Shown: positions 1,512 to 31,567, counted from the first letter of the stretch. The stretch is 64,000 nt of DNA from Heterodontus francisci (GCF_036365525.1 NC_090380.1:82283658-82347657), one strand, 5' to 3'. Program-made: numbers and translations. Notes: generated by a model from the letters alone, not told the origin.

Positions 1512-1607
1512 CTGAGTGTAACATAAAATTCCAAATATGCTAGCTACAAGAATTTTTTTTGAATTAAAAATAAAGTTACATTGAAATCTAAAAACACAAT
1601 CACTTAC

Positions 1608-1712
1608 TTGATATTGAATATGTACAAAGTACTGCAATAACCACAGACACCATGAGTGCAATTAGACTGACAACTGTCAGCATTATCCATGATAGTTTAT
1701 CACCGGCAGGAC
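1608..1712 (-). CDS. Transmembrane exon: (G)PAGDKLSWIMLTVVSLIALMVSVVIAVLCTYSIS
   Basis: 105-bp phase 1-1 exon with acceptor attctcaacag| and donor |gtaagt, in frame with the C1 exon. About 23 uncharged hydrophobic residues. Confidence 0.85.
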
Positions 1713-2599
1713 CTGTTGAGAATTATTTAGGACATGCATCAAAAGCTGTATTGAATAACATACCACAAAGCAGGACATAAGACTTTAGCCTTTTATTTTT
1801 CTTCAAAGTTAACTGTTAAATAAGTTCACATGTCAATAACCATGAAGGGAATGTGATCAGTTTGGTAAACAAAATACTTTCTGTAAGTTATTTATTTTTT
1901 GTAGATTTCATTGACCCTATTGTGCACAGCTAACGCATGCCTATGCCATTGTACATTAAAATGCCTGCGGAAAAAAAATTGAATTTCAATCCACGGTTTC
2001 TCCATCTTTTCAGCAGCTTTAAACAAAGGTTTTAAACACCACAGTCACAATGGAGATCACACCTTCAATAAAAGTCAAAATCCCTGAAATTCCAGGAAAC
2101 AGACAACCACTTGTCTATCTGATTTGGCCCTGTCCAAAGGTAATTCCAACAATTTTCAAAATGGCACTTGGATGCTTTATCAGAGGATTGTTTGGGCTGG
2201 CCTGATCACAGTATTCAAAGACCGAAATTTTCCTGAATGCTTCTTTCATTATGTGCCAACACTCTAATGGCAGTTGATCTCATAGTAGACATCTCTTGCC
2301 ATTGGAATAAGCATTGTGGCGCCTACTTATGGCTGTCACACACAGATGTACTTACTTTTGTTCATACTCTGGGTATAACGGGAGTGATTGCCAAGGAATC
2401 AATGATCCTGCCAATCAGACCTCTAAGTATGATGTTATGATGGAAAGAAGCACTCTGGGATTTAGCAATTAAACAGTAAGAGGTAGAAACTGGGTGGAAA
2501 AGGTGCTGTCCTAAAATCCTCTCCACCACCCAGATTCAGATTGTGCTGATTCAGTACCCAAGGTGGACTGGAATTTCTGGATCATCGTGTTTTTTTTTT

Positions 2600-4790
2600 T
2601 GGAGATGAGTTATCAGTTACCTGTTTGAAGAAAATAAAGTATTTGGACAAGTTAATAATTTAGGGAGGGAATTGCAGAGCTCAGGGCCTAGAGCTGAATA
2701 CACAGCTACCAATGGTGGAGCAATTAAAATCAGGGATGCACAAGAGGCTAGAATTAGAGGAGCACAGATATCTTGGAGGGTTATGGGGCTGGAGGAGATT
2801 ACAGAGATAGGGAGAGGTGAGGACATGGAGGGATTTAGAAACCAAGGATGAGAATTTTAAAATCGAGGCATTGCTTGACCAGGGAGTCAATGTAGGTCAG
2901 CAAGCACAGGGATAATAGTTGAATGAAACTTGGTGTATGTAAGAGCATGGATGAACTCAAATTATGGTGGGTAGTCTGTGGGAGACCAGCCAAGAGCACA
3001 TTTGTATAGTCAAGTCTAGAAGTAACAAAGGCATGAATGAGTTTGTCAGCAACTGATGATCCAAGGCAGGGGTGAAGTCAGGCAATGTTACAGCAGTGGA
3101 AATAGGCAGTCTCAGCAATGGCACGGATAAGTGATCGGAAGCTCATCTTGGGGTCAAATATGACAACAATGTTGTTACCATCCTGGTTCAGTCTCAGGCT
3201 GTTGCCAGGGAGAGGGATGGAATGGGTAATGAAGGAATGGAATTTTGGAGCGGTGTCCGAAACAATGGCTTCAGTCTTCCCAATATTTAATTGAAGGAAA
3301 TTTGTGCTCATGCAGTACTGGATGTCGGTTAAGCTGTCTGATAATTTAGCAACAGTGGAGGAATTTAGAGAGGTGGTGGGTTACAGCAGGGTGTCGTCAA
3401 CATAAATGTGAAAACTGACACTGTGCTTTCGGATGATGTTGCCAAGGGGCAGTATGTAAATGAGAAATAGGAGGGGGGCTATGGATAGATTGGGGGACAC
3501 CAGAGATAACGGTGCAGGAGCAGGAAGAGAAGCAATTGCAAGTGATTCTCTGGTTACGATTAGGTAGATAAGAATGAAAGCAGGTGAGAGCAGTACCACC
3601 CAACTGGACAAAAGTGGAGAGGTATTGGAGGAAGATGTTGTGATCAACTGTGTCAAAGGCTCAGTCAAGTCAAGAATGATGAGGAGGGATAGTTTACTTT
3701 TGTCACAGTCACATAGGATGTCATTCATGACTTTGATAAAAGATGTTGCAGTACTGTAACAAGGGCAGAAACCTGATTGGAGGGAATCAAACATGGAGTT
3801 CTGGGAAAGATGGACATGGACTTGGGAGGTGACAACACATTCAAGAACTTTGGAAAGGAAAGGGAGGTTGGAGATGAGGCAGTTGTCTGCAAGGATGGTG
3901 GGGTGAAGGGTTGGCGTTTTGAGGAGAAGGGTGATAACGGTGGATTTAAAGGAGAGAGGGACAACACCTGTAGATAGAGAACCATTAACATTATCAGCTG
4001 ACATGGGGACCAGGAGGGAAGTTGGCTGTTGAGCAGTTTAGTGGGAATAGGGTTGAGGGAGCAGGAGGTGGATCTCATGGACAATATGAGCTCGGAGAGG
4101 GCATGAGAGGAAATAGAAGAGAAACTAGAGAAAGATGTAAGTTCAGGGCTAGGGCAGGGGGGAACATTATAGGAAGTTTAGCCAGGTGGAATAGGGGAAG
4201 GGAGGGACACAGCAGAGGTGGCTGATCGGATGGTCTCAATCTTAGCGACCAATTTGTGCACGAGCTCCTCACACATTGTTGGAGGTGAGGGTGGGAGAGA
4301 TAGGGGTAAGGTGTTTAAAAAGACAGTTTGCAATAGAAAAGAAGTCGGGGGTTATCTTTGCATTCCAAGGTGATCCTGGAATAGTGAAGAGTTTCAGCAG
4401 ACTAGAGCAGGACCGTTGCTTTATGTGTGCTGGCCAGATCAGGCAATGAATGGCCAAACCAGTTGTCTGCCACAACCTTTCAAGCCTGCATCCCTTGGAC
4501 CTGAGGGAATAGAAATGAGGGCCATTCCAGGGGGAATGACCAAGGTGAGAGAGAGTAATGGTTTTATTGGGGACGAGGGTCTCAATGGTGCAGTTGAGGG
4601 TGCAGCTGAGCAAGTCAGTAGCTGCAGGCAAACAAAAGACTGAATGCTGGACAGTTGAAATTTTGTTAGTGCAGTTGTAAGTGAATTAGGCGATAGTTTT
4701 CCCAGGGTGCATAGAGAAGGAGGTAGGATTGGGGGATGGAAGGGGAATGTGGGTGGAGAGTAATACAAAGGATGATACCAGTGCCACATT
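2600..4790 (-). mobile_element. Degenerate L2-clade LINE (RT region and 3' end)
   Basis: Broken ORFs with PISNLPFLSKVLE-like, QSGF, LDL(S/T) and YVDDT motifs, then LQLNIGKTE. Confidence 0.85.
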
Positions 4791-4890
4791 CATATAGATA
4801 TCTTCTTCAAATCATAAAAGGCAAAACAAAATTGGAATCATATAACTTCAAGTTTGCAGTGTCCAAATAAAAACACATGGGCATTCTTAC

Positions 4891-5196
4891 CTTGGTTACT
4901 AGCAGAAATCCATTCATTGATGGGTGCAGACAGTGTCGTGTGGTTCACCTGACAGGAATAATTTCCACCTTCATTCCAGTCAGATTCAGAAAGATTCAGA
5001 AAATTTGTGATGGAAAATGAGCCATCACTGTTTGCATGCAGGGTCCCATTTTTGGTGCCATTGGTGAATAACTGCCCACCTTTAAACCAGGACACTTGAA
5101 TGCCTTCAGGAAAGAACTCCAGTGATGTGCAGACTAGCTGTATACCTTCATTAGGGTAAGACAGAGTCTCTGCTTTTAACTGGACAGTTGGGCAAG
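4891..5196 (-). CDS. C1-set Ig domain exon
   Basis: 306-bp phase 1-1 exon with acceptor tgactttcag| and donor CAAG|gtaaga. (A)CPTVQLKAETLSYPNEGIQLVCTSLEFFPEGIQVSWFKGG...NSDGSFSITNFLNLSESDWNEGGNYSCQVNHTTLSAPINEWISASNQ shows the C1 hallmarks CxxxxF(F/Y)P, W, NxDGxF, W and YxCxVxH. Confidence 0.93.
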
Positions 5197-6329
5197 CTGA
5201 AAGTCAATTGTAGCAGGTTATTCAACATGTACTGTTCAGACTGCATGTCATTTTGTATTGAGTACTCCCATATGCTTGGTTAGGACACACAGGGGTGATT
5301 TTCAATTGCCGACCATCTATAGTTCACCTAAAATTCAAGGCGAGCAATTGAAAATCGGGGAGAGGGCATCACAGCCATCCCATTGATGCCCAAAGGCAAC
5401 CTGATACAATTTTCAGGCGAGCCTGTAAATGGGAAAGCTGGATACCTGTCTGAAATACCCAAGAGATAGTTTAAACATGAAAATCATGGTCCTATGCAGT
5501 TGTAGAACCCTGAGTGTAAGCTGGTATAATTGAGCAGAGCTTGTGCCATGAACCCTCCTCCCAGTTATACCAGACATTCAGCAGCCTGTAGGAGGGCGGG
5601 GGTGGGGGCAGTGGCAGGGCCAGAAGAGCAGGACTGTTCAGGCCTCACTTGGCACAAATTTGGGTGCTACTTGACAATCGATCCTATAACCTGTTGTACC
5701 AAATACCACATTTCGTGACCCAAAGTTGATATAACTCCCTTTGTTACTAGGCCTGACCATTTCCACTTATATTAAAGATCATAAACACACAAAATACAAA
5801 TAAAACAAGCGGTTTTTAACTGTTACACTATTATTTCTATACATATTAGCAATGTCAGCCTAAGCTTTTGCTGTATGGCTGTCCCTCAGTACAGTGTGCT
5901 CTTTTACAACACCATATTGAATACACTATTAATATTTTTTCAGCTGTTATTCAACTTTTAAAAGGTCAGCAAAAGTTCATGCAGTTGGATTAATAATGTT
6001 AAATAATGTTAATAATGTTCAACCTTGGGGTTGAATTTCCTGTCAATTTGCACCAGCAAAAAAGTGCAATCATAATGGTGATTTCTGGCACAAAGTTCGT
6101 TAAATTCAGGCATAAATAACTTACACTCGTTCTTACACTACACCTGAATTTCCTCACTGTTTTATGTACGCCTATCCATCATTGCAACCACTCGCATCTC
6201 AACTCATTATAGTGGCTCCACCCACAAGCTAATGTTGGAGAGGTGATTTCCTGCCATTACACTGGTTCCAAATGGATGTAGAATTAAGCCCAGAATTCTA
6301 AGCCAGCAACAAACTGTAATTTTTCCAGT

Positions 6330-6900
6330 AGAATAGAGTCATAGAATGATAGAATGGTTACAGCACAGAAGGAGGCCACTCAGCCCATCAAGCAGGTGCC
6401 GGCTCCCTGCAAGACCAATTTAGCTGGTTCCATTCCCCAATCCTTTCCCTGTAGTCCTGCAAACATTTTGCCTTCAGGTACTTATCCAATATTCTTTTGA
6501 AGGCCATGATCAAATTTGTCTCCACCACACGTACCGGCAGTGCATTCCAAAAACTGTTGTGTAAAGATTTTCCTCATGTTGCCTCTTGTTCTTTCACCAA
6601 TCACTTTAAATCTGTGTCCTCTGGTTCTCGACCTTTTCACCAATGGGAACAGTTTCTATCTATTCTGTCTAGACCTCTCATGATTTTGAACACTTTTATC
6701 AAATCTCCTCTCAATCTTCTCTTCTCTTTGGAGAACAACCCCAGCTTCTCAAATCCATCCACATAACTAAAGTCCCTCATCTCTGGACCCATTCTCGTAA
6801 ATCTATTCTGCACCCTCTCTAACCCATTCACATCCTTTCTGAAGTGTGGTGCTCAGGATTGGACACAATACTCCAGTTGAGGCCAAATGAATGTTTTGTA
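6330..6900 (-). mobile_element. CR1 LINE 3' fragment
   Basis: LERVQNRFTRM...LGLFSKEKRRLRGDLIKVFKIM. Confidence 0.85.
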
Positions 6901-9900
6901 AACATAGGAACGTAGGAGCAGGAGTAGGCCATTCAACTGATCGAGCCTGTCCCGCCATTCAATATGATCATGGCTGATCATCCACTTCAATGCCTTTTTC
7001 CCACGCTAACCTCACATCCCCTTAAGTCATTTGTATTTAGAAATCTGTCAATCTCTGCTTTAAACATATTCAATGACTGAGCTTCCACAGCCCTCTGGGG
7101 TAGAGAATTCACAACCCTCTGAGGAATGAAATTTCTCCTCATCTCTGTCCTAAGTGGCCTCCCCCTTATTTTGAAATTGTGTCCCCTGGTTCAAGACTCC
7201 CCAGCCAGAAGAAACATCTTACCTGCATCTACCCTGTCTATCCCTTTAAGTATTTTGTAGGTTTCAATAAGATCACCTCTCATTCTTCGAAACTCTAGAG
7301 AATACAGGCCCAGTTTCCCCAATCTCTTCATAAGACAGTTCCGCCATTCCGGGAACAGGTCTGGTGAATCTTCGTTGCACTCCCTCTATGGCAATAATAT
7401 CCTTCCTAAGGTAAGGGGACCAAAACTGCACACAGTACTCCAAGTGCAGTCTAAGTGCAGTCGGCGCAGGCTTGGAGGGCCGAATGGCCTGTTCCTGTGC
7501 TGTACTGTCCTTTGTTCTTAACCAAGGTTCTATACAATTGAAGCAAGACTTCACTACTTCTGTACTCAAATTCTCTTGCGACAAAAGCTAATACTATTAG
7601 CCTTCCTAATTGCTTGCTGCACCTGCATGTTAGCTTTCAGTGACTTATTGACAAGGACACCCAGGTCCCTTTGTACATTTACACTTTCTAATCTCTTTCC
7701 ATTTAAGAAATACTCAGCATATCTATTCCTCCTACCAAAGTAGATAACCTTACACTTTTTCCACATTATATTCCATCTGCCACATTCTTGCCCACTCACT
7801 AAGTCTGTCCAAATCCCCTTGAAGCCGCTTTGCATCTTCCTCACAACACACATTCCCACCAAGTCATCCTCGAACTTGGAAATACTACTTTTGGTCCCCA
7901 CATCCAAATCATTGATATATATTTTGAACAGCTGGGACCCAAGAACTGATCCCTGTGGTACCCCACTAGTCACAGCCTGCCAACGCAAGAATGACCCGCT
8001 TCTTCCTACTCTGCTTTCTGCATGTTAACCAATCCTTAATCCATGCCAGTATATTACCTCCTACCCCATGTGTTTTAATTTTGCTAACCAATCCCTTGTG
8101 GGGGACTTTATTAAAAGCTTTATGAAAATACAAGTATACCATGTCCACCGACTCCCCTTTATCAATTCTTCTTTTGGGCCTCCTTATCTCGAGAGACAAT
8201 GGATACGCGCCTGGAGGTGGTCAGTGGTTTGTGAAGCAGCGCCTGGAGTGGCTATAAAGGCCAATTCTGGAGTGACAGGCTCTTCCACAGGTGCTGCAGA
8301 GAAATTTGTTTGTTGGGGCTGTTGCACAGTTGGCTCTCCCCTTGCGCCTCTGTCTTTTTTCCTGCCAACTACTAAGTCTCTTCGACTCGCCACAATTTAG
8401 CCCTGTCTTTATGGCTGCCCGCCAGCTCTGGCGAATGCTGGCAACTGACTCCCACGACTTGTGATCAATGTCACACGATTTCATGTCGCGTTTGCAGACG
8501 TCTTTATAACGGAGACATGGACGGCCGGTGGGTCTGATACCAGTGGCGAGCTCGCTGTACAATGTGTCTTTGGGGATCCTGCCATCTTCCATGCGGCTCA
8601 CATGGCCAAGCCATCTCAAGCGCCGCTGACTCAGTAGTGTGTATAAGCTGGGGATGTTGGCCGCTTCAAGGACTTCTGTGTTGGAGATATAGTCCTGCCA
8701 CCTGATGCCAAGTATTCTCCGAAGGCAGCGAAGATGGAATGAATTGAGACGTCGCTCTTGGCTGGCATACGTTGTCCAGGCCTCGCTGCCGTAGAGCAAG
8801 GTACTGAGGACACAGGCCTGATACACTCGGACTTTTGTGTTCCGTGTCAGTGCGCCATTTTCCCACACTCTCTTGGCCAGTCTGAACATAGCAGTGGAAG
8901 CCTTACCCATGCGCTTGTTGATTTCTGCATCTAGAGACAGGTTACTGGTGATAGTTGAGCCTAGGTAGGTGAACTCTTGAACCACTTCCAGAGCGTGGTC
9001 GCCAATATTGATGGATGGAGCATTTCTGACATCCTGCCCCATGATGTTCGTTTTCTTGAGGCTGATGGTTAGGCCAAATTCATTGCAGGCAGACGCAAAC
9101 CTGTCGATGAGACTCTGCAGGCATTCTTCAGTGTGAGATGTTAAAGCAGCATCGTCAGCAAAGAGGAGTTCTCTGATGAGGACTTTCCGTACTTTGGACT
9201 TCGCTCTTAGACGGGCAAGGTTGAACAACCTGCCCCCTGATCTTGTGTGGAGGAAAATTCCTTCTTCAGAGGATTTGAACGCATGTGAAAGCAGCAGGGA
9301 GAAGAAAATCCCAAAAAGTGTGGGTGCGAGAACACAGCCCTGTTTCACACCACTCAGGATAGGAAAGGGCTCTGATGAGGAGCCACCATGTTGAATTGTG
9401 CCTTTCATATTGTCATGGAATGAGGTGATGATACTTAGTAGCTTTGGTGGACATCCGATCTTTTCTAGTAGTCTGAAGAGACCACGTCTGCTGACGAGGT
9501 CAAAGGCTTTGGTGAGATCAATGAAAGCAATGTAGAGGGGCATCTGTTGTTCACGGCATTTCTCCTGTATCTGACGAAGGGAGAACAGCATGTCAATAGT
9601 CGATCTCTCTGCACGAAAGCCACACTGTGCCTCAGGGTAGACGCGCTCGGCCAGCTTCTGGAGCCTGTTCAGAGCGACTCGAGCAAAGACTTTCCCCACT
9701 ATGCTGAGCAGGGAGATTCCACGGTAGTTGTTGCAGTCACCGCGGTCACCTTTGTTTTTATAGAGGGTGATGATGTTGGCATCGCGCATGTCCTGGGGTA
9801 CTGCTCCCTCGTCCCAGCACAGGCATAGCAGTTCATGTAGTGCTGAGAGTATAGCAGGCTTGGCACTCTTGATTATTTCAGGGGTAATGCTGTCCTTCCC

Positions 9901-10810
9901 AGGGGCTTTTCCGCTGGCTAGGGAATCAATGGCATCACTGAGTTCCGATTTGGTTGGCTGTATGTCCAGCTCATCCATGACTGGTAGAGGCTGGGCTGCA
10001 TTGAGGGCAGTCTCAGTGACAGCATTCTCCCTGGAGTACAGTTCTAGGTAGTGCTCAACCCAGCGGTCCATCTGTTTGCGTTTGTCAGTGATTATGTCCC
10101 CCGATTTAGATTTGAGGGGGGTGATCTTCTTGATGGTTGGCCCAAGAGCTCTCTTCATGCCATCATACATTCCTCTGATGTTTCCGGTGTCTGAGGCCAG
10201 CTGAATATGACTGCATAGGTGTTGCCAGTAGTCGTTTGCGCAACGCCTAGCTGTTCTTTGTGCAGTACTTCTGGCTGCTTTAAGTGCTGCGGATGTTAAA
10301 TCGCTGGGGGCTTTCTTGTAGTTCAAAAGTGCAATGCGCTTAGCGGCTATGACAGGTTCCAGCTCTTCATTATGATGGTTCATTTTTATGGTAACAATGC
10401 TGTTAGTAAAATCCTCAAAAAACTCCAACAGGTTTGTCAAACCTGATTTCCCATTCATAAATCCATGTTGTCTATTCCCAATTAGATCATTATTATCCAA
10501 GTATCCATTTATCACAACCTTCAGAAGAGATTCTAGAATTTTCCCAATGACTGATGTAAGTCTAGGAGGTCTGTAATTCCCTGTTTTCTCCCTCCCTCCC
10601 TTCTTAAATAGTGGGGTGACATTTATGACCTTCCAATCTGCAGGAACCGCTCCAGAATTTATAGAAGATGATCACCAATGTATCCACTATCTCCATACCT
10701 ACCTCTTTCAACACACTTGGATGTAGAATATCAGGCCCTGGGGACTTATTAACCTTCAGCCCCATTAATTTTTCCAATATAACCTTATTACTAATACTAA
10801 TTTCCTTGTA
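6901..10810 (-). mobile_element. Degenerate CR1 LINE interrupted by an RTE insertion (CR1 parts ~6901-8169 and ~10390-10810)
   Basis: QHGFMNGKSGLTNLLEFFE on one side of the RTE continues as RIDKGESVDMVYLYFHKAF, SGVPQGSVLG and LEYCVQFWSP on the other. Confidence 0.85.
8170..10375 (-). mobile_element. RTE-clade LINE, 5'-truncated, uninterrupted RT ORF with C-terminal Cys/His finger
   Basis: About 720 open codons: KAPGKDSI, NYRGISLLS, QCGFR, FIDLTKAFD, GVKQGCVLAP, LFADD, YLGS, CSTCGRACHSRIGLYSH. Short 3' UTR with an A-rich repeat tail. Confidence 0.95.
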
Positions 10811-13000: not shown

Positions 13001-13145
13001 TACTATGTTACCATTGTGGATGTTCCCTTATTTTCTACTTTCTTTCCTACAATATTTAGAGAAATGCTGGTTGTGAAGTATAAACTGTTAAAATCAGAGG
13101 GGTGATAGATGCATGGTGTTTTTGAGTTATGGATGTAAAACTCAC

Positions 13146-13505
13146 CTTCCACTGTGAGGCGTGTGCCTTTACCTATTGCTCTTCTAGCAGGGGGAGGTAT
13201 TTCAATAGAAACCTGACAGAAGTAAATGTCGGAGTTATTTAAACGAAGATCGTAGATTATGAAAGATGAGGATTTTGTTGAGAGATCCACTGAAATGTTA
13301 GTACGTTCTGTACAATGATTGAAAGAAGTAACATTAACTTTATTTTCTATATGTTGACAGAATTGTTGTGCACTGGTGTTCGTCTTCCATGTAATCCTCA
13401 ACTGTTCCTCTGTATCGCTGTATGAACAGTTCATTTGTGCGACGCCTCCCTTCAATACTCTGATCTCTGATGGTGTCTGGGAGACAGTTAGGTTTCTGCT
13501 TCTCA
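13146..13505 (-). CDS. V(J)-type Ig domain exon, CD28H/TMIGD2-, CD28/CTLA4- and NKp30-like, germline-joined
   Basis: 360-bp phase 1-1 exon with acceptor ttgttttttcttcag| and donor GAAG|gtgagt. Translation RSRNLTVSQTPSEIRVLKGGVAQMNCSY...LRITWK...FCQH...NHC...DLRLNNSDIYFCQVSIEIPPPARRAIGKGTRLTVE shows B-strand Cys, C-strand Trp, DxYxC and a J-like GxGTxLxV. Confidence 0.93.
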
Positions 13506-15123: not shown

Positions 15124-18100
15124 TGTTACATCTTTATGTTGTTTTTCTGGTTCCCAGATGTTGGAAAGAATCACACTTTAAATGTGGAAAAGGCTGGAGT
15201 CAGTCTTGTTTATTACAGCACCATGCTGTCTGCTATAGAACCTGATTTAGCTGGTTGTTGTGTAACATATAACATGATTCCTCAGTGCAGCTGTGAATCT
15301 GCCCCCCCCCCCCCCCCCCCCCCACTGGAACACTTACACATAAAAAACAGTTCCTAGCTAATTAGTTCCTAACACCTTACAGATAGTATAACAATATATA
15401 ACATATATAACATCCCTCTTTCTTTAAAATATAATGCCCTATATCAATATAACTGTCAATATAAATAAAGAAGATTATCATCTGACTTGTGGAAATAATC
15501 TGAACCCCTTTTTAGAGTCTATTATAGCGTGTATTCTTTTTTAAAAAAAATTATTCACGGTATCGCTTGGTTGGTAAGATGTTGTGACTCCATCTTGTAG
15601 ATTTGGCATTTCACAAGTGTTCTTTTGACCGTCTGGACGTGTCTTTCTATAAATCCATGTCCCCGTGGGTAGTGTGGTGATGAGGTGATGGTGTTGAACT
15701 CATACTGGTCAGCAAATTCCTTACATTTTCTGGATGTAAATTGGGTGCCATTGTCACATATTAACCTTTCAGGAATCCCTTGCTCAGCAAACAGAACTCG
15801 TACTGCTGAGATTATTGTTGTAGCTCTCAAGTCTTTCATCTTCTGGATAAAAGGGAATTCTGAGTAGTAGTCTGCGACTGTGAGATACCATTCTTGATTA
15901 CGTGTGAATAAATTGACTGCTACAGTATGCCATGGTTTGGGTGGTACTTCAGTAGCTATCATCTCCTCTTTCTGTTGTGAGTTTCTGTACTTCTGGCATA
16001 CATTGCATGTAGACACCATATTTTCAAAATCTTTGTATATGCCTATCCAGTACACAGCTGATTTGGCTCCCATATGGCCTTCGCGTATCTTTTGGAGAGG
16101 TTCTTCCTGCATTGCTTTGGGTATGATTATTATGCATCCGGTCAGCAGAACACCATCTTCGAGTGAGATGTCATCTCTGATAGACAGTACTGCCATATTG
16201 CTGGCTGTGTGTGCTGTATCTTATCAGGCCATCTCTGGATCACTTGCTGAGATAGCATCTGTACCTCATCGTCTTTGCTGGTCTCACCTCTAATTTGACT
16301 CAGTTTCGGTGGTGTTACGTTCACTAGGTGATGAATCTTTATGCTTAGATCTTCTATCTCATGTTTCTTCTGTGGTGACAACTGAGATAGGATGTCTGCC
16401 AGCACCATTATGCTTCCTGTTTTATATTTCAGAGTGAAATCATAACTCTGAAGCCTCAAGACTAACCTCTGCAGTCTTGCTGGTGCTTTACATAGATTTT
16501 TCTTGTAGATCTGCTCCAGTGGACGATGATCACTCTCCACAGTGAACTTCCTCCCATTGAGATATGTGTGGAACTTCTCACATCCATACACGACTGTCAA
16601 AAGCTCTCTCTCTATGTTGGCATATCATGTCTCAGCTGATGTCAGAGCTTTGGATGCAAATGCTATCCCTTTTGTACCAGGGCTGCTCCCAGTCCTTTTG
16701 TGGAAGCATCTACTTGTAGAGTGACAGGTTTCTTTCTGTCGCAGTACGACAGACTTGTCTCCTTGCATACTACCTTTTTGAGTTTGTTGAAACTCCTGTC
16801 ATGTGACTCTGACCACTGGTACTCTACAACTTCTTTCATCAGCTCCCGCAGGTTTGCTATGTGTTCCAACATGTGCAGAACAAAGGAACTCATGTATTGT
16901 ACCAAACCAAGGAAACTTCTCAACTCTCTCTTATCTCTTGGGGCTTCCATCCCTGAGATGGCTTCTTTCAGGGCTTGGCTTAACTCCATCAGATGTGTAC
17001 ACCATTCTGAAGAACTGACATTCTGTCACTTTCACAATGCATTTGTCTGCATTTAGCTTAATCCCAACTTTCCTGGTTCTCTCCATGGCTTCATGTCGAT
17101 GGTTGTCATGATCTTTTCCATCTACACCATATATCTGGATATCATCAGCTATGCTGCCTGCTCCTTTCATCCCCTGTATGTCTCGTCTACTTTCTGTTGG
17201 AACACATCCTGGGTCACTTTGAGGCCAAAGGGTAGACGCAGGAATTTGTATCGTCCAAAGGGTGTGTTGAATGTTGTCAACAGTGAAGATTCTGCTTCTA
17301 GCTTCACATTCCAGTAGCCATTTCTGGCATCCAGCTTGCTGAAAACTTTTGCCCTTGCCAGTGCTGGTGTGATTTCTTCCAATGTTGGAATAGGGTAGTG
17401 ATCCCTCTTTATTGCTTGATTAAGATCTTTGGGATCTAAGCAAATTCATAGCCATCCATTTGGCTTCTCTCTCACCACGATGGAATTTAACCAATCTGTA
17501 GGCTCTGTGACTCTGGTAATCACCTTCCTTTCTTCCATTTCTTGGAGCTCTCTTTCAAGTTTTCCTTTTAGTTCTACTGGTACTTTACATGGGGGATGAA
17601 TCACTGGGTTCATCACTGGGTCAATAGTGATGTGATACTCAAATCTTCAAAGCATCCAACCATCTCATCAAAACACCCTGGGTACATTTGTACCAGATCT
17701 TCTCTGCTTCTGATCAGAGGGGGCTTTTCAATGGGTGTACTGTCTTCAACCTTCAGTGTTGCCTCCTTCACCTCATGGTTTACTGAGATAATCTGCAGCT
17801 CTTCACAACTGCTCAACTCCAGGATAGCTGGACCATCTGTTTCTGTAACATAGAACATACAGTTAACATCATTTCCTTGTGTGTCCCTCTGATTTGGGTT
17901 GTTCCTCGCTGTCGAATCTCAGTTCCCCCATATGCTGTTAGCATGACGTTAATTGGTTTCAGAGCACCTTTCCTTGGATAACCATTTTTCTCCAAATTTT
18001 CAGGAAAGATCTTCTGGTATAGTCTGAGTTGGATGATGTTACTCTGCGCTCCAGTATCAATCTTCACCTTCAAATTTATCATTGTGGGCTTATTTCTCAG

Positions 18101-19417
18101 CCTCTTCCTAATCTGAAGGGTTGTGTGAATTTCTTTTCTCTGGGAACTGTCACATCCAGACTTTCATGCAATTCTATGGTTCCTATGTCTATCATGTTCT
18201 CAAACCCACCGCCATCTTCCAGGTTATGGATGTTTTGGTTTCTTTCACTGCTCCTTCGCCTTGTCTGATGACTCATCTACCACCTTCCTGCCTTGTTCTG
18301 CACATCTTTTCCCAGTGATTGGTCTTTCCTCAAGCTCTGCAGATTGATCTATATGCGGGATATTTCCTTCTATCTGTCAATTCATGTGGTCATCCACAGC
18401 TGCTGCACGTCTTTCTCTCTGTCTGGTGTACATTCTTTAGTTGCTGTTTCACTGTATTGACCCTCCTGCCTGTCTCTTGGCTTAACTGAAGGCTAGCCGT
18501 TTGGGTAGTCAGTGCTTTCATCTGTTTGCTTGTGGCTTCATGTGCTCTGGCAGTGTCTACAGTCTGCGATATTGTGAACTTGTCCTGTCCGATTAGAGCT
18601 GTCTGTACTTCAGGATGTGCAGAACCCCAAATGAGCTGATCTATCAGCTGTTCATCTGTGTCCATTTTCTGGCTGCATTTTTCAATCTTGCTACAAAATT
18701 GTCAATGGGGTCACCTAGTTCCTGTCTGAGGCCTTGAAATTCATATCGGTATATCCGATGATTTGATTTTGGCTGGAGATAGGTGCAGAATCTTTCAAAA
18801 ATTTTGTCTGGATTTCTGCTGTCCTCTTCACTTAGGTCCCAGCTGTTGAATAAATTTAATCCTTTATCTCCAGCCCCCTGAAAGATATAACTGACCCTCG
18901 CCACTTCACTAGTGCCTTTTAGGAAGCTACTAAATGCCAAATTGTACTTTTGTTTAAACTTCGCAAATGCCTCTATGACATCATCAGCTTACCAATTCAT
19001 TATGGGCTGTAGCTATGCATTCATTCCTGTCCCAGTTGAGATTTTGTTTTTTGTTTTTGCACGAGTCACTCAGTTTTTCTTTCTCTCTGGCACTTATTTG
19101 GGTCAATTTTCTCAATCTGATGCTTTTAAAAATGTTCTAAGTTTACTCACAGACACTCTCTGCCACCATGTTATGTCATAATGTTGTTTTTCTGGTTCCC
19201 AGATGTTGGAAAGAATCACACTTAAAACTTGGAAAAGGCTGGAGTCAGTCTTGTTTATTATAGCACCATGCTGGTTGTTGGGTAACATATAACATGACTC
19301 CCCAGTGCAGCTGTGAATATGACCCCCCACTGGAACATTTACACATAACAACTAATTCCTAGCTAATTAATTCCTAACATTTTACAGATAGAATAGCAAT
19401 ATATAACATGTATAACA
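15124..19417 (-). mobile_element. Gypsy LTR retrotransposon, two LTRs, frameshifted gag-pol
   Basis: TG...CA LTRs at 15124-15412 and 19169-19417, 5-bp TSD AGGGC, PBS-like TGGTGGCAG after the 5' LTR, PPT aaagaaagaggga. Protease DTGA, RT (KLDARNGYW, RLPFGL, IADD), RNase H (DAS, SDHRPL) and integrase (DNGTQF, ERHVQTVK) occur in PR-RT-RH-IN order. Confidence 0.95.
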
Positions 19418-21900: not shown

Positions 21901-23909
21901 TCTATCTTCCTTAGTAAACACCAATACAAAGTACTTATTAAGTATTCTAAAAAAAAAGAAGGGTCTCTGACCTGAAATGTTAACTCTGCTTCTCTCTCCA
22001 CAGATGCTACCAGATCTGCTGAGTGTTTCCAGCATTTCTTGTTTTTATTTCAGATTTCCAGCATCCGCAGTATTTTGCTTTTATTTTAGTGTTTAATTCA
22101 CTGCCACTTCTCTTCCAGGAATGCCTACCTTGAAGAAGTTCTGCTCTTCTCTCCAACGGGATTTTCATTTGTCTCTTTTACCTTGTTCACCTTCATTGCT
22201 TTCTATTTCCCTCCTGGTGTTTGATAAGGTATCTACCAAAACTCGTTTTCACAGCTACATCTCCTTCCTCAGTGACTGTCTCTGGCTCCGACTTATTCCA
22301 CGTGGTTTCCATCTGCAGCCTCACCCATCATGTTTTGAATCCACCCAGGATGACAGGTATCTCCGAGAAATACAACGTTCCTCGGACTGCTATTCTCGCC
22401 ACATCCTGAGATCCACATTCAGTGCTATGCACCGCCACATGCACACACTGGGCCTCTCTCTCCAGCAGCACCGCCTCACCTTATCTCAAAGCTGTTCTAC
22501 TCCGCAGTTTTATTTCATCCTTCATCTCATCCGACGTATTAACAAAAAACTTTTTTCTTCCTTTCAGATGTCAAGGAACGCAAGCTCCAGATCCTTCTTC
22601 CCCTTCACTTCCCTCTGACCCCACCCCTTCTGCTCTGACCCCTTGCCCTGTATTCACTATACCCTCTGACCTTCCTCTCTCTGACGCTGAATGTTCTGTA
22701 CTCAGAAAAGGTCTCAGTTTAATCCCCTTACGTCCCCACCTCAATGAATTTTGCGTTCGGCATGACGTTGAGCTCTTCTTCCATCGCCTCCGGGCTCACT
22801 TCTTTGACCAGGAGTCCTCCCCCGATCAGTAGACCCATTCATCCGCCTCCAGCATTCTCCCTCTACCTGGACCCCTCCCACTGGCCTCTTACCTGCTCTT
22901 GATCTTTCATTGAAAACTGTCGGCGAGACATTGGTCATCTCAATTTCTCTGCCCCCCTCACTCACTCTAACCTGTCCCCCTCTGAACTTGCTGCACTCCG
23001 TTCTCTCAGATCTAACCTCGACATTGTCATCAAACCTGCAGACAAGGGTGGTGCTGTTATTGTATGGCGTACCGACCTCTACCTTGCAGAGGCTCAGCGC
23101 CAACTCTCAGACACTTCTTCCTACCTCCCTCTGGACCATGACCCCACCACCGAACATCAAGTTACTGTCCGCAGGACTGTCACTGACCTCATCTCCTCTG
23201 GAGATCTTCCCTCTGCAGCTTCCAACCTCATAGTCCCGCAACCCCAGACAGCCTGCTTCTACCTCCTTCCCAAAATCCACAAACTGGACTGTCCCGGCAG
23301 ACCCATTGTGTCAGCCTGCTCCTGCCCCACTGAACTTATTTCTTCCTATCTTGACTCTATCTTTTCTCCGCTGGTCCAGTCTCTTCCCACCTACATCAGT
23401 GACTCTTCTGATGCCCTACGTCATTTTGACAATTTCCAATTTCCTGGCCCCAACTGCCTCCTCTTCGCTATGGACGTCCAATCTCTCTACACCTTCATCC
23501 CCCACCAGGACGGTTTGAGGGCTCTCCGCTTCTTCCTTGAACAGAGGCCCAACCAGTCCCAATCCACCACCACCCTCCTCGGCCTGGCTGAACTTGTTCT
23601 CACATTGAACAACTTCTCCTTCAACTCCACTCACTTCCTTCAAATAAAAGGTGTTGCTATGGGTACCCGCATGGGTCCTAGTTATGCCTGTCTTTTTGTG
23701 GGATATTTCGAACATTCCTTGTTCCAGTCCTACTTAGGCCCCCTCCCCCAACTCTTTTTCCGGTACATTGATGACTGTATCGGTGCTGTTTCCTGCTCCT
23801 GCCCCGAACTGGAAAACTTTATCAACTTTGCTTCTAATTTTCACCCTTCTCTCACCTTTACATGGTCCATCTCCGACACTTCCCTTCCCTTCCTCGACTT
23901 CTCTGTCTC

Positions 23910-24257
23910 CACAGTGGCGCAGTGGTTAGCACCGCAGCCTCACAGCTCCAGGGACCCGGGTTCGATTCCGGGTACTGCCTGTGTGGAGTTTGCAAGTTCT
24001 CCCTGTGTCTGCGTGGGTTTTCTCCGGGTGCTCCGGTTTCCTCCCACAAGCCAAAAGACTTGCAGGTTGATAGGTAAATTGGCCATTATAAATTGTCACT
24101 AGTATAGGTAGGTGGTAGGGAAATATAGGGACAGGTGGGGATGTTTGGTAGGAATATGGGATTAGTGTAGGATTAGTATAAATGGGTGGTTGATGTTCGG
24201 CACAGACTCGGTGGGCCGAAGGGCCTGTTTCAGTGCTGTATCTCTAATCTAATCTAA
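23910..24257 (+). mobile_element. HE1-type tRNA-derived SINE inserted in the Penelope RT
   Basis: A box TGGCGCAGTGG, B box GGTTCGATTCC, CR1-like 3' end and (ctaat)n tail. Confidence 0.88.
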
Positions 24258-25520
24258 TCTCTGGGGATAGGCTGTCTATTAATATCCATTATAAACCCAC
24301 CGACTCCCTCAGCTACCTCGACTACACTTCTTCACATCCTGCCTCCTGTAAGGACTCCATTCCATTCTCCCAGTTTCTCCGTCTCCGACGCATCTGCTCT
24401 GATGGTGCTACCTTCCATGACAGCGCTTCTGATATGTCTTCCTTTTTCCTCAACCGAGGATTTCCCCCCACTGTGGTTGACAGGGCCCTCAACCGTGTCC
24501 AGCCCATTTCCTGCACCTCTATCCTCACCCCTTCCCCTCCCTCCCAGAACCGCGACAGGGTTCCCCTTGTCCTCACTTTCCACCTCATCAGACTCCATAT
24601 TCAAAGGATCATCCTCTGCCATTTCCACCACCTCCAGCGTGATGCCACTACCAAACGCATCTTCCCCTCCCTTCCCCTGTCAGCATTCCGAAGGGATCAT
24701 TCCCTCCGTGACACCCTGGTCCACTCCTCCATTACCCCCACCACCTCATCCCCTTCGCACGGCACCTTCCCCTGCAATCGCAAGAGGTGTAATTCCTGCC
24801 CATTTACCTCCTCTCTCCTCGCTATCCCAGGCCCCAAACACTCCTTTCAGGTGAAGCAGCAATTTACTTATACTTCTTTCAATGTAGTATATTGTATTCA
24901 CTGCTCACAATGTGGTCTCCTCTACATTGGGGAGACCAAACACAGACTGGGTGACCGCTTTGCGGAACACCGCCGCTCAATTCCCAAGCAGGACCCCGCG
25001 TTTCCAGTTGCTTTCCATTTCAACATTCCCCCCTGCTCTCATGCTCACATCTCTGTCCTGGGATTGCTGCAGTGTTCCACTGAACATCTACGCAAGCTCG
25101 AGGAACAGCATCTCATCTACCGATTAGGCACACTACAGCTTGCCGGACTGAACATTGAGTTCAATAATTTCAGAGCATGACGGGCCCCCCATTTTACTTT
25201 TATTTTTAGTTATTTTTTTCTTTTTCCCTTTTTAAAATTTTTTTTTTGTGTTTATTTTATTTTATAGCATCTTAGTCTGTTCAGTTTGCTTACCCACTGC
25301 TTTTTTTCATGTTTGTACTTGCGGCTGTTCAATTTTCAGTCCGTTAACACCCTTTCTGTACTAATGCTTTGTCTTTCAACACACCATTAACATATCTTTG
25401 CTCCATGACCTTCTGGTCAGCTATTCTGTGACCTTGTCCTATTTACACCTTCTCCTTTGTTATCTCTTGCCCCACCCCCACTTTACTTGCTTATAACCTT
25501 TTACATTTCTAATATTTTCC

Positions 25521-25557: not shown

Positions 25558-25616
25558 CTGCTTCTCTCTCCACAGATGCTGCCAGACCTGCCGAGTGTTT
25601 GCAGCATTTCTTGTTT

Positions 25617-27660: not shown

Positions 27661-27664
27661 TATA

Positions 27665-28070
27665 GGGGGAGACGGTGGAGTAGTGGTAATGTCACTGGAC
27701 TAGTAATCCAGAGGCCCAGGCTAATGCCCTGGGGACACAGGTTCAAATCCCACCGCAGCTGATGGAATTTAAATTCAATTAATTAATAAAAATCTGGAAT
27801 TGAAAGCTCGTCTTAGAAACTGTGCCATGAAACTATCATTGACTGGTATAAAAACTTACCTGGTTCACTAATGCCCTTTAGGGAAGGACATCTGCTGTCC
27901 TTACCTGGTCTGGCCTAAATGTGACTCCAGACCCACAGCAATGTGGTTGATTCTTAACTGCCCTCTGAAAAGGCCTAGCAAGCCACTCAGTTGTCAAGGG
28001 CAATTAGGGATAGGCAACAAATGCTGGCTCTTGCCAGCAATGCCCACATCCTATTAAAGAATAAAAAAAA
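27665..28070 (+). mobile_element. tRNA-derived SINE with CR1-shared 3' tail
   Basis: A box-like gtggagtagtgg, B box ggttcaaatcc. The tail gggataggcaa..aatgctggc..gaataaaaaaaa is shared with the LINE end at ~47340-47400. Confidence 0.8.
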
Positions 28071-28074
28071 TGCC

Positions 28075-28630
28075 TATTGAAGACTTTTGCATTTATTTTT
28101 ATGTTAGCTGCAAGTATCTTCTCTCTTTGCTGCACTTACTTCTCTTGTTACTTCCCCTCTGAACTTTTTATATTCAGCTGGATACACTTGTATTATTAAC
28201 CTAACATCTATCATACGCAACTTTTTTTTGCTTCATCCTACTCTCTATCTCTTTCATCATCCAGGGAGCTCTGGCTTTGTTTATCCTACTTTTCCCTCTT
28301 GTGTTAATGTACCTCGACTGTACCCGAAATATCTCCTCTTTAAAGGCAGTCCATTGCTCTACTACAGTTTTGCCTGTCAATCTTTGATTCCAATTTGCTT
28401 GGGCCAGATCTTTTCTCACCCTAATGATATTGGCCCTCCCCTAATTAATTATCTTTACTCTGGATTTCTCCCTGCCCTTTTCCATAGCTAACCTAAACCT
28501 TATGATACTATGATCACTGTCCCCCAAATGCACCCCTACTGACACTTGATTCATTTGACTGACCTCATTCACCAGAATCAGATCCAGCAAGGCCTCCTTC
28601 CTCGTTGGACTGGAAACATACTGATTTTTA
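28075..28630 (-). mobile_element. CR1 endonuclease/linker fragment
   Basis: MRKDLAQANW...EQWTAFKEEI...APWM. Confidence 0.75.
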
Positions 28631-28802
28631 AAAATTTTCTGTGACTAAATACATATGGTGGATCCCATTTCTATGCAATGATTTGTAAAGTTAAAGTAAA
28701 ATATATTTCTGTTTGCCAAAAAAAATTCTATTTTGTCTTCCCACAATAATTAATAGTGACTAAAGATACTCTTTTATGTTGTTAGACTTGAATTAATCTT
28801 AC

Positions 28803-28866
28803 CTGCAATTAGAAAGACGTGAAGCAAAGCACAAAGTCTGATCACTTGTGTTCCCAAAGGTATCAT
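28803..28866 (-). CDS. Leader (signal peptide) exon of VJ-C1-TM Ig-superfamily receptor gene: MIPLGTQVIRLCALLHVFLIA(V)
   Basis: ATG at 28866-28864, hydrophobic 21-aa peptide, phase-1 donor GCAG|gtaaga. Splices in frame to the V exon (G+TG = Val). A pyrimidine-rich acceptor (tatcttcag|) at 28881 implies a further upstream exon. Confidence 0.75.
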
Positions 28867-31567
28867 TTCATTTGTCTCATCCTGAAGATATTGGAATAGA
28901 AATCAATAACTTTGAGAAAACAGAAAATACTTTATTAGTACATTATGAAAGTATCATTCACAACAACAGCTTACACCCATACCATCAAGAAATGAGCCAA
29001 GGTGCTTCACAAATAGGTGTAAGGAAAACAGACCCTAAGCCAGGAAGGAAAACATCCGGATAGATGACTGAAAGCTTTGTCAATGAAATGGGTCATGAGA
29101 AGGTTTTTAAAAGTAAAGAGAAAGATGAAGATGCAGTGAACTTTAGAGAGAGATTCCAAAGATTAATGCTACAATATTTGATAAGGGCCGAAAACAGGCA
29201 TTAGGATCACGCTGGACCATTAACCTGTATCGTTCTTTGTGATGAATGCCTGCTCATTACCATGATTGTAGTGTTCAGACAGCACTACGTGCGCTGCTGA
29301 GTAGCTGCACGCCTGAACACAACGTGCAATATTTTGAATGCCAAGCACCACTTAACGCTAGCCCGCAGTACCTAAAGTCAGCATGCATCTCTTAAAGGGA
29401 TCATGACTGGAGTAGGTGATGGAAGTGGCTGGGGAAGAGTGTCTGAGCAGGAAGAGCATTGAATAATGACACAACAGAGCAGAGAGTGTGCTCCAAGTTT
29501 CTGCAATGCAGCACTGGATATCTTGGTGCAGGAGGTGGACAGGAGGAGAGATGTCCTCTATCCACAGGGGGCCAGGAGGCCCTCCAGGCAGACACTGCAA
29601 AGGCAGTGGTATTAAATAGCCGTCACCATCAATGCCAGCAATTTAGCCCCGAGGACCTGAATGGAGTGACACAAGAAATTCAAGTGGTAAAAGTTAGTGA
29701 ATTGATCTTCAAATTTCACATCCTTACACCTGAGCCACTAGCCTCACACACTGCTCAATTCACCACATCACAGAATCACAGAATTGTTACAACACAAAAG
29801 GAGGCCATTCAGCCTGTTGTGTCTGAGCTGGCCCTCCAAAAGACCAGTTTACCTAGTGTCCCTTCACTCACCTATCAGCCAACTCTATCAATCATGACTC
29901 AAAACCTCACATTCATGGCTTCATTCACGCTCACACACTTAGCACTGCTGCAAGCTTCACACCCACATCTCACAGCTTGCACATACTGCCAGTTATTCAA
30001 CCATGACAGGCACCATCACCCAAACAGATTGCATGACACTAACTGACTCACTTCCCTCTGTCTTGTAGGACAAGGTGGCACATAACCACAGGCAGGAGCA
30101 CCTAGCCAGCAGGGGCAGGCACGGCTGTATGTCCTTACCCCAATGGAGGAGACAGTGCTGGCCATCATTGGAACGGCCATGGCCAGCAGCAGGGCTGAAA
30201 GGATTGAACATGACAGAATCCTCATACCTAATCCCAATTCTTCTCCATGTATCCTACTTCCCCATCATCCCACAATCTCTCCTGATTTACAAACTGCAGT
30301 TGGTGTAAGCATGTTCCTCTTGCTTTCCTCCTTTTCTCTCACTGCAATCCTTCCCTTGTAACTTTTTCCTTTCAGATATCCAAGAATTGTAACCTGATCA
30401 GGTAGAAGCTAGAAGTGGAAGAGAAAGAAGGTACAGATGAAGAAGGAACACCGCCACTAGGTCTGACACTCACAGCTACTAGTTCAGATTCTGACACTGT
30501 GCATACTTTAGAAGGCAGCTTAGTGTCAGGATCTGTGCCTGGTAAGACACCGGGCACGTGACCAGCACTCAGGGCTGGTGGAAAGGATACTGCAGGAGCC
30601 AGTTTGCTGGAGAATGAAGTAGTACATGTGTCCTGCAGCAAAGGACTCAGATGGGCACTTCGATGGGACAGCCTACAGGAAAAAGCTGATCATAAAATGC
30701 TTGGTGCATTGGCAGGTCTGCTAGAAAGGCTGTCGACGCTGTTAAGGAGCAAGGAGGAGTCCAGCTCCAACTTGGGACTGAGCTTTGTGCTTGAAACCCA
30801 TCCTTTCCAGCATGGAAGTGATGGCCAGCTCCATTAGCACACTGGTGAACACAATCATGTTGCAGTGTCTGATGACCAATATCTGAGCTTCCATTGCAGC
30901 ACAAGCACATGTCACCCACTGTCTGGGTGCTGCAGTGCAAGTTCAGACTGCCGTCATCATGACTGTTGATTATAGTGTTCAAAGGGGCTTGCGGGGGGTC
31001 ACAGCAGGTCAGCAATCTGTCCTCCGAAACATTAACATGATTGTTGAGATGCTACTCAGGAAGACAGCATTCGTCCTCCCAGCACTGCCACTCTGCCCTT
31101 GCTGTTCCTGCAAGCCAAATAGTCCAGACTGCTGCTGCCCATGCTGAGATGGTGCAGTCCAAAGCTGGGCCTTCTAGGCCCAGGGCTGCATGAAGTCATC
31201 CTGCAAGGCCACCTGCAGTCTCCCCCACTAAAAGTCAGCAGCCTTCCACCCACCATGCTGCAAGCACTGGGGGTAGTAATGTGTAAGAAGACTAGGACAG
31301 GCAAAGGCATCTGCAAGACAGGAACAAAGGAAATGCAAAAAGGTGATTAGTTAACTTTTGTATGGAATATTGGATGGTTTGATTGATAAAGTTGGTTTTG
31401 AATGTTTTCTTTGTGGTACTTTTGTTTCAGCATTGTGGCCAAGAGGATGCTGCGATGCTTAGTAACTGAGGAAAGGTAAGGTGTGGGACTGCTGGTGAAT
31501 AGGGAATTAGAGTTGCGTTCACTCATTCCACAGTCAGATCATGGTCACCCCAGCCAGTAAGGGAATT

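What the first reader, a model, noticed from the sequence alone, without database searches (positions are those of the whole stretch)
1608..28881. Non-rearranging antigen-receptor-like gene: germline-joined VJ + C1 + TM with a CD28-family V domain
Seen: four minus-strand exons join in frame (64+360+306+105 nt, ~278 aa) as Leader-V-C1-TM. The J-like G strand (IGKGTRLTVE, GxG bulge) is in the same exon as the V, and I found no RSS by eye. Established: C1-set domains are largely confined to Ig/TCR, MHC/b2m, tapasin, SIRP and some B7 proteins, whereas CD28, CTLA4, TMIGD2 and NKp30 have a single V and no C1. Inference: this is a hybrid architecture, a costimulatory/NK-type VJ domain on an Ig/TCR-like C1, of the kind proposed for the pre-RAG antigen-receptor precursor. 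It may be an undescribed cartilaginous-fish receptor lineage. Germline VJ-C1 genes have been reported in lower vertebrates, so novelty needs checking.
Basis: partly seen in the sequence, partly recalled or inferred. Interest (0 to 1): 0.9.

Follow-up and report, generated by a model that had tools for sequence, protein, structure and literature searches.

The report
Shark non-rearranging V-C1 membrane receptor gene
This is a real, transcribed shark gene for a membrane receptor that joins a CD28-type variable domain to an antibody-type constant domain without gene rearrangement; the family is old and conserved, carries only automatic names, and probably corresponds to the already described PRARP kind.

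Summary
Four minus-strand exons have AG/GT borders and join in phase 1: leader 28866-28803, V(J) 13505-13146, C1 5196-4891 and TM 1712-1608. One RNA contig joins C1 directly to TM and shows no intron depth. The tail exons lie beyond the window start.

About 30 automatically named proteins share leader-V-C1-TM and a tail motif IYSLLGQ/E. They come from sharks, rays, elephant shark (RefSeq NP_ record that also carries GenBank accession AFK11223), sturgeon, gar, bowfin and lungfish. The lineage is therefore not restricted to cartilaginous fish.

- **V domain:** it carries CD28H-type marks (YFCQVSIEIPPP, GKGT, an extra Cys pair). The family V profile scores CD28-like V domains at 60-77 bits and TCR V domains at 24-41 bits. 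Deep tree nodes are unresolved.
- **C1 domain:** the best match among solved structures is nurse-shark UrIg2 V-C1.
- **Paralogues:** elasmobranchs have two old V lineages, A and B, and this gene is type A. Their C1 exons are homogenised within each species.

The architecture matches PRARP (Fu et al. 2019). First-stage notes report similar V(J)-C1-TM-YxxL clusters on other pieces of this genome; these are unchecked. Verdict: a new member of a known kind, of moderate interest.

The parts
28803..28866 (-). Leader exon (coding part, 64 nt, ATG at 28866, ends in phase 1). A short upstream ORF at 28880-28863 overlaps the start codon.
   Evidence: Sequence and GT donor. 81% identical to residues 1-21 of Carcharodon XP_041066806 and 62-71% to other orthologues' N-termini.
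13146..13505 (-). V(J) exon, 360 nt, phase 1 to 1. It encodes the whole V domain including the J-like G strand.
   Evidence: AG/GT borders. Pfam V-set 2.5e-12 and ICOS V-set_2 9e-10. 69-70% identical to orthologue V domains. RNA contigs hold 100% of its sampled words.
13189..13200 (-). Codons for I-P-P-P in the FG loop (YFCQVSIEIPPP).
   Evidence: I124, P125, P126 and P127 (P0080 numbering) are invariant in 25 family members. The stretch matches the CD28H/CD28HL motif YxC[EKQN]xxxEIP[P][P] quoted.
13147..13173 (-). J-like G strand GKGTRLTVE (GxG bulge motif), in the same exon as the V.
   Evidence: Translation. Aligns to the TCR alpha J region FGxGTxLTV in PDB hits.
4891..5196 (-). C1 exon, 306 nt, phase 1 to 1.
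   Evidence: Pfam C1-set 2.5e-18. 80% identical to Carcharodon orthologue C1. Covered by RNA contigs X1 rec 1, X2 rec 15 and X3 rec 23 with no mismatch.
1608..1712 (-). Stalk and transmembrane exon, 105 nt, ending in phase 1. There is no charged residue in the TM. The cytoplasmic exon(s) lie beyond the window start.
   Evidence: Spliced directly to C1 in contig X1 rec 1 (record 1202|1203). 58-64% identical to orthologue TM regions.

Best explanation
The locus is the 5' four-fifths of an expressed, non-rearranging type I membrane receptor gene. Its layout is split leader, one-exon V(J) domain, one C1 domain, an uncharged TM, then a short tyrosine-motif tail encoded beyond the window.

It is the type A paralogue of a family conserved in cartilaginous fishes, non-teleost ray-finned fishes and lungfish.

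Shown:
- The exon structure, the C1-TM splice in RNA and the absence of a V/J split.
- Family conservation.
- CD28H-type hallmarks in the V: an invariant IPPP FG loop, a GxG motif and an extra Cys pair.
- Ig/UrIg2-like character of the C1.
- Two trans-species V lineages (A and B) whose C1 exons are homogenised within each species.

Inferred:
- The receptor binds a germline-fixed ligand through the PPP-bearing FG loop, as CD28, CTLA4 and ICOS bind B7-type ligands. A B7-family ligand is the most likely candidate.
- It signals, or is internalised, through the conserved tail tyrosine. In type A sharks the motif is V-I-Y-S-L-L-G-Q, which fits the ITIM pattern VxYxxL. This would make it an inhibitory or co-signalling receptor, not an antigen receptor.
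- The C1 probably serves as a spacer or a pairing module shared by A and B chains.
- It most probably belongs to, or is sister to, the PRARP family of V-C1-TM-ITIM genes.
For: - Exons, splice sites and phases.
- Domains.
- RNA: contig X1 rec 1 joins TM to C1. Bins 1801-2520 and 5221-5400 have no depth. X1 and X2 hold all V exon words.
- Family. These include Callorhinchus NP_001279395 / AFK11223.
- CD28-type V: motif match with the text. The family V HMM scores CD28HL1-like and CD28X-like V-only receptors at 60-77 bits and TCR V at 24-41 bits. An exhaustive HMMER search with the V exon returns mostly EIPPP-type single-V receptors and few Ig/TCR V domains.
- C1: Ig constant regions and UrIg2 are the best hits. 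The family profile aligns contiguously over V+C1 of UrIg2 at 91.6 bits. Foldseek puts Ig light chains first.
- A/B pattern: V tree clade A 96/89 and clade B 94/90. In the C1 tree, A and B pair by species. Within a species, V identity is 49-63% and C1 identity 83-96%.
- Tail motif: Y309 and G313 are conserved in at least 90% of 12 members. Tails are listed.
Against: - The V->C1 junction in this species was not displayed directly. The loose-end list was truncated.
- The tail of this particular gene is outside the window, so its motif is known only from orthologues.
- The position -2 residue of the tail tyrosine varies (V, A, T, G, P), so an ITIM is not universal in the family.
- No ligand, tissue or cell type is known.
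- The homodimer prediction gave no answer.
- V trees do not resolve whether the V is nearer to CD28-like or to TCR V domains (58/79 node; AU p 0.20 and 0.26).
- PRARP identity rests on my recollection of an abstract, not on sequence.
Confidence: 0.75

Rival explanations
1. It is a surviving relic of the pre-RAG antigen-receptor precursor. That is, it would be a direct descendant of the VJ-C1 gene lineage that gave rise to Ig and TCR.
For: One-exon VJ with a split leader, followed by a C1 domain. The best solved-structure match is UrIg2 V-C1, itself proposed as such a relic. TCR alpha V-J gives the best single PDB hits for the V exon. An RSS-like heptamer-24-nonamer lies at the exon end.
Against: The V hallmarks (IPPP loop, extra Cys pair) and the HMM scores point to the CD28 family and not to Ig/TCR V. 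The deep nodes are unresolved. The RSS-like site is not between V and J, and sites of that quality occur 8 times in the window.
Confidence: 0.1
2. It is an exon-shuffled chimera. An early gnathostome CD28H-like single-V gene captured a C1 exon from an Ig/UrIg-like neighbour. Ongoing gene conversion then keeps the C1 exons of tandem paralogues alike.
For: V and C1 have different nearest relatives. All exons are phase 1-1, so they are freely shuffled. C1 exons show within-species homogenisation while V exons do not.
Against: The opposite direction, in which CD28-family genes lost a C1, explains the same data. No donor C1 was identified. The C1 of the family is monophyletic against the two outgroup C1 domains available (100/100).
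Confidence: 0.12
3. The V and C1 exons belong to different genes, or the locus is a germline-joined shark Ig light-chain cluster mis-read as a receptor.
For: The V and C1 exons are 8 kb apart, and leader and V are 15 kb apart, across transposon-filled introns. Automatic names call many orthologues 'Ig kappa/lambda light chain-like'.
Against: A 2129-nt RNA contig extends 617 nt upstream of C1. This fits V + leader + UTR, in runs that hold all V words. Orthologues, including the elephant shark NP_001279395 / AFK11223 record, have V-C1-TM-tail in one protein. The C1 is spliced to a TM exon. Junction codons reproduce conserved residues.
Confidence: 0.03

Closest known systems
[quoted passage not shown]
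   Same: As I recall the abstract (own knowledge; the paper is not held): non-rearranging VJ-joined IgSF genes occurring as a gene pair, with a V-C1 ectodomain in non-avian species, a TM, a potential ITIM in the tail, presence in bony fish, amphibians, reptiles and birds, and absence from mammals. It is cited as a joined-VJ family. Architecture, tail type, paired genes and fish distribution all match.
   Different: No PRARP sequence could be obtained, so orthology is untested. I found no statement that PRARP exists in cartilaginous fish or that its V is CD28-like. The 2024 CD28-family survey lists PRARP only as another joined-VJ family.
CD28 family, especially CD28H (TMIGD2), CD28HL1 and CD28HL2 (Quiniou et al. 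2024, PMC11599192)
   Same: FG-loop motif YxC[polar]xxxEIPPP followed by GxG. An extra Cys pair spaced as in CTLA4 (own knowledge for CTLA4). The Pfam ICOS V-set model hits. CD28-like V-only receptors are the nearest non-family V domains.
   Different: All nine CD28-family members are stated to have a single V and no C domain. This gene has a C1. There is no stalk cysteine in this gene. The family tail motif IYSLLGQ/E is none of the CD28-family motifs (YxxM, YESF, EYEDM). Family accessions are absent from that paper and its supplements.
UrIg and UrIg2 (Flajnik et al. 2023, 2025; PDB 9dmx)
   Same: Non-rearranging, one-exon VJ with a split leader followed by C1-type domains, in elasmobranchs. 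UrIg2 V-C1 is the best solved-structure match of the family profile (91.6 bits over V+C1).
   Different: UrIg has three C domains and is secreted. UrIg2 has 9-11 C domains. This gene has one C1, a CD28-type V and a tyrosine-motif tail. It also extends to holocephalans and bony fishes, whereas UrIg genes are reported in elasmobranchs only.
Ig light chains, including germline-joined shark clusters, and TCR chains
   Same: V-J-C1 domain order. Foldseek's best matches are Ig light chains. The J-like strand aligns with TCR alpha J.
   Different: No V/J split and no RSS between V and J. The protein is membrane-anchored with its own signalling tail. The TM has no charged residue for CD3-type partners. 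The V hallmarks are of CD28 type.

Membership tests
CD28 family (as defined in PMC11599192) | [quoted passage not shown] | tested here: not met
   A C1-set exon (2.5e-18) is spliced between V and TM. Orthologues show the same.
CD28 family (as defined in PMC11599192) | Conserved FG/CDR3 motif (P-[P/L]-P or EIP[P][P]) followed by GxG | tested here: met
   YFCQVSIEIPPPARRAIGKGT. IPPP is invariant in 25 members. Motif text.
CD28 family (as defined in PMC11599192) | Family-specific cytoplasmic tyrosine motif (YxxM, YESF, EYEDM, ITIM/ITSM of PD-1) | tested here: inconclusive
   The tail is outside the window. Orthologues carry IYSLLGQ/E, which is not one of the listed CD28-family motifs but fits an ITIM in type A sharks.
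PRARP | Non-rearranging V with the J-like segment in one exon | tested here: met
PRARP | V-C1 ectodomain, TM, potential ITIM in the tail | tested here: met
   V-C1-TM in the window. VxYxxL is seen in orthologue tails P0080, P0078, P0081 and P0102. This gene's own tail was not seen.
PRARP | Sequence orthology to chicken PRARPA/B or their fish, amphibian or reptile orthologues | not testable with these tools
   The paper and its sequences are not held. Protein searches returned no tetrapod V-C1 member.
UrIg/UrIg2 | VJ exon with split leader followed by three or more C1-type domains | tested here: not met
   There is only one C1 exon. The RNA contig joins it directly to TM.
Rearranging Ig/TCR | Separate V and J segments flanked by RSS | tested here: not met
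   V and J-like strand are contiguous in one exon. The only RSS-like site lies after the J-like strand.
SIRP | V followed by two C1 domains; SIRP-type V | tested here: not met
   One C1 only. The 'SIRP-alpha-like' labels are automatic names.

The most novel reading that the evidence does not exclude
This family is the missing link between antigen-receptor-type VJ-C1 genes (UrIg, PRARP) and the CD28/CTLA4 costimulatory family. On this reading, CD28-type receptors descend from a VJ-C1 ancestor by loss of C1. The A and B chains, with old divergent V domains on a C1 kept identical within each species, pair through C1 as a germline-encoded two-chain receptor. That arrangement would be a non-rearranging analogue of a TCR or Ig heterodimer.
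Probability: 0.12. Interest if true: 0.8.

Novelty: new member of a known kind. Interest (0 to 1): 0.5.

Why it matters
[quoted passage not shown] That survey also defines the family as having a single V domain. A conserved, expressed gene that carries the CD28H-type V signature on an Ig-type C1, from chimaeras to lungfish, bears on that question and on the list of non-rearranging VJ-C1 genes used to reason about the pre-RAG receptor.

The A/B pattern (V lineages older than the shark-ray split, with C1 exons homogenised within each species) is a testable hint of a shared C1 function. If the family is PRARP, the value is smaller but real. It would extend PRARP to cartilaginous fishes and link it to the CD28 family.

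Tried and rejected
- **Joined protein:** Each exon was searched by reference, and full-length orthologues from the databases stood in for the joined model.
- **Homodimer prediction:** Complex prediction on two copies of the P0080 ectodomain gave 'no answer' (score 0.02). This is no evidence either way.
- **C1-only homology search:** the search with the C1 region returned family members only, so a C1 tree with named Ig/TCR/MHC/SIRP outgroups could not be built. Only one TCR beta C and one unnamed C1 served as outgroups.
- **AU tests:** they rejected neither family monophyly (p 0.20) nor family+TCR (p 0.26).
- **Literature:** searches for the family's accession numbers found nothing. The PRARP paper, the first UrIg paper and Ohta 2019 are not held.
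- **Paralogous exons:** there is no paralogous V or C1 exon elsewhere in the window.
- **ESM Atlas:** the top hit for the lungfish member is a 66-member chordate V/C1 cluster without ids, so it could not be followed.
- **Cryptic RSS:** considered and set aside as probably chance. There are 8 such sites in the window, against 0.7 in mononucleotide shuffles, which underestimate real DNA.
Full report
**1. What is in the sequence**

On the minus strand there are four exons with canonical borders:
- a leader exon at 28866-28803 (64 nt from the ATG),
- a V exon at 13505-13146 (360 nt),
- a C1 exon at 5196-4891 (306 nt),
- a stalk/TM exon at 1712-1608 (105 nt).

Every junction is phase 1. The three split codons read Val, Ala and Gly. 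These are the residues that orthologous proteins have at those places.

Two ATGs just upstream of the start (28880, 28871) run into a stop, so 28866 is the start codon. The TM exon ends in phase 1, so the gene continues beyond the window start.

The introns (15 kb, 8 kb and 3 kb) are filled with retroelements. Reverse transcriptase, integrase and RNase H domains were confirmed. No second V or C1 exon exists in the window.

Exons were searched singly by reference, and full-length database orthologues served for whole-protein work.

**2. Is it a gene?**

Pfam calls the exons V-set (2.5e-12; ICOS V-set_2 9e-10) and C1-set (2.5e-18).

Three runs of one sample hold the V exon, two of them with all sampled 31-mers. 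When their contigs were laid on window 1-5400:
- A 2129-nt contig (depth 66) lay on the TM exon and then directly on the C1 exon.
- The neighbouring intron bins had no depth.
- 617 nt of that contig lie upstream of C1. This is enough for V + leader + UTR.
- 1099 nt lie downstream of TM and fall outside the window.

The runs are therefore RNA. The C1->TM splice is shown directly. The V exon is transcribed in its germline form.

It is inferred from three things: the contig geometry, a 2-nt 'AG' overhang that equals the last two bases of the V exon, and the orthologues.

**3. The family**

An exhaustive HMMER search with the V exon and two word-indexed searches found about 30 proteins of 300-330 aa. 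All share the same order of parts:
- leader;
- V with YxC-xxx-(E)IPPP-x4-GxGT;
- 'VEA-PTV', then a C1 with LxCTSLEFYP..IQVSWF...YSCQVNHSTL;
- an uncharged TM;
- a short tail ending in ..[IV]YS[LM][LV]G[QE]..

These features are documented.

The proteins come from sharks, skates, rays and sawfish, the elephant shark, sterlet, gar, bowfin and African lungfish. The elephant shark member has a RefSeq NP_ record (NP_001279395) that also carries GenBank accession AFK11223.

Their names are automatic and contradictory: Ig kappa- or lambda-like, SIRP-alpha-like, tapasin-related-like, or uncharacterized.

The closest relative of the window's gene is Carcharodon XP_041066806, with identities of leader 81%, V 69%, C1 80% and TM 64%. 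The window's own protein is not in the databases.

**4. What the domains resemble**

V domain:
- The FG loop YFCQVSIEIPPP followed by GKGT matches the motif given for CD28H, CD28HL1 and CD28HL2 in the 2024 CD28-family survey.
- IPPP is invariant in 25 members. A second Cys pair (C71 and C86 in P0080) is conserved in at least 90% of them.
- A profile of the family's V domains scores CD28HL1-like receptors (YESF/YQSF tails), CD28X-like receptors (EYEDM tails) and other single-V EIPPP receptors at 60-77 bits. TCR V domains score 24-41 bits.
- Against solved structures, the single V exon hits TCR alpha V-J, ICOS, CTLA4 and CD28 at similar weak scores.
- In a maximum-likelihood tree the family's V domains are compatible with one clade (AU p 0.20). 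The node that would place them with CD28-like or with TCR V domains is weak (58/79), and neither arrangement is rejected.

C1 domain:
- The best hits are Ig constant domains and UrIg2.
- The whole-family profile aligns without a break over V and C1 of nurse-shark UrIg2 (91.6 bits, the best of all PDB chains).

Whole protein:
- An AlphaFold model of the Carcharodon orthologue (pLDDT 80.6) has two beta-sandwich domains and a TM helix.
- Foldseek's best matches are Ig light chains.

The V side rests on motifs and profile scores, not on a resolved tree.

**5. A and B chains**

Elasmobranch members fall into two V clades that each contain both sharks and batoids. Clade A has support 96/89 and includes the window's V. 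Clade B has support 94/90.

In the C1 tree, the A and B genes of one species pair with each other: Carcharodon 95/92, Pristiophorus 99/96, Mustelus 100/99, plus Scyliorhinus.

| Comparison | V identity | C1 identity |
|---|---|---|
| A vs B within a species | 49-63% | 83-96% |
| A vs A across species | 63-73% | 73-83% |

The accession numbers of the Carcharodon and Chiloscyllium genes are consecutive, which suggests tandem genes.

The simplest reading is an A/B duplication older than the shark-ray split, with concerted evolution of the C1 exon.

**6. How it probably works (inference)**

The gene has a fixed V with an invariant proline loop, eleven N-glycosylation sequons, no charged TM residue, and a conserved tail tyrosine that fits VxYxxL in type A sharks. 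These features point to a germline-encoded co-signalling receptor that is probably inhibitory.

It would bind a fixed ligand through its FG loop, as CD28, CTLA4 and ICOS do with B7-type ligands. It would signal or internalise through the tail tyrosine.

The homogenised C1 may be a pairing surface for A and B chains or a shared spacer. A homodimer prediction gave no answer.

**7. Comparison with what is known**

- UrIg and UrIg2 are non-rearranging VJ-C1 genes of elasmobranchs with 3 and 9-11 C domains.
- PRARP (Fu et al. 2019) is cited as a joined-VJ family. As I recall its abstract, it is a pair of non-rearranging V-C1-TM genes with a potential ITIM, found in bony fish, amphibians, reptiles and birds.
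- That description fits this family closely. However, the paper and its sequences are not held, so membership is untested. I put it at about one in two.
- The 2024 CD28 survey states that all nine members have a single V. Neither its text nor its supplements contain this family's accessions.

**8. Verdict**

It is not a shark-only novelty, and it belongs to a known kind, the non-rearranging VJ-C1 receptors. No curated name or paper could be found for the shark, gar or lungfish members.

The CD28-type V signature and the A/B V-versus-C1 pattern are the points worth following up.

First-stage notes report similar V(J)-C1-TM-YxxL clusters on other pieces of this genome. I did not check them.

Noticed in passing
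window 13117-13156 (minus strand): An RSS-like site, perfect heptamer CACAGTG, 24-nt spacer and nonamer TCAAAAACA (7 of 9), lies in V-type orientation. The heptamer is formed by the codons for L-T-V at the end of the J-like strand, and the site spans the splice donor. It is the best of 8 such sites in the window (0.7 expected in simple shuffles). It is probably chance, and conservation in orthologous loci was not examined.
   Followed up: partly
window 5192-5194 (minus strand): This gene has a Cys at the V/C1 boundary (VEA-C-PTVQL), where orthologues have R, A, Q or S. It is an unpaired extracellular cysteine that could make an interchain bond in this species only.
   Followed up: no
window 15555-18940 (minus strand): A decayed LTR-retrotransposon-like pol region lies inside intron 1. 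Integrase core and zinc-binding domains and an RT-RNase H domain were confirmed. ORFs that by eye look gag-, protease- and RT-like adjoin it but were not scanned.
   Followed up: partly
window 8221-10515 (minus), 33403-35016 (plus), 60073-60681 (minus), 23308-24102 (plus): Several non-LTR-type reverse transcriptase ORFs (RVT_1, up to 1e-35) are present. The 764-aa ORF at 8221-10515 is intact and lies in intron 2 of the receptor gene.
   Followed up: partly
window 24434-25180 and 61577-61906 (plus strand): Two related ORFs end in ..LLYIGETK[HR]RLGDRFAEH..EEQHL[IV][FY][RQ]LGTLQ[LP]AGLNIEFNNFRA. By eye this looks like the GIY-YIG endonuclease end of Penelope-like elements. Pfam gave no hit at 1e-4 for the first copy.
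   Followed up: partly
proteins P0012, P0089, P0109 (Chiloscyllium punctatum chiPu_0002802, 2799, 2801); P0107 and P0033 (C. plagiosum LOC122555561): Bamboo sharks have a third, divergent V-C1-TM paralogue (type C: YYCKIASYIPPP, with tail YVNV/IYENTF instead of IYSLLGQ) in the same gene cluster. P0012 is a mis-spliced model that skips most of V and C1.
   Followed up: partly
window 30000-64000: No further Ig-domain exon or other host gene was recognised in the upstream 35 kb. ORFs there are transposon-derived or short.
   Followed up: partly
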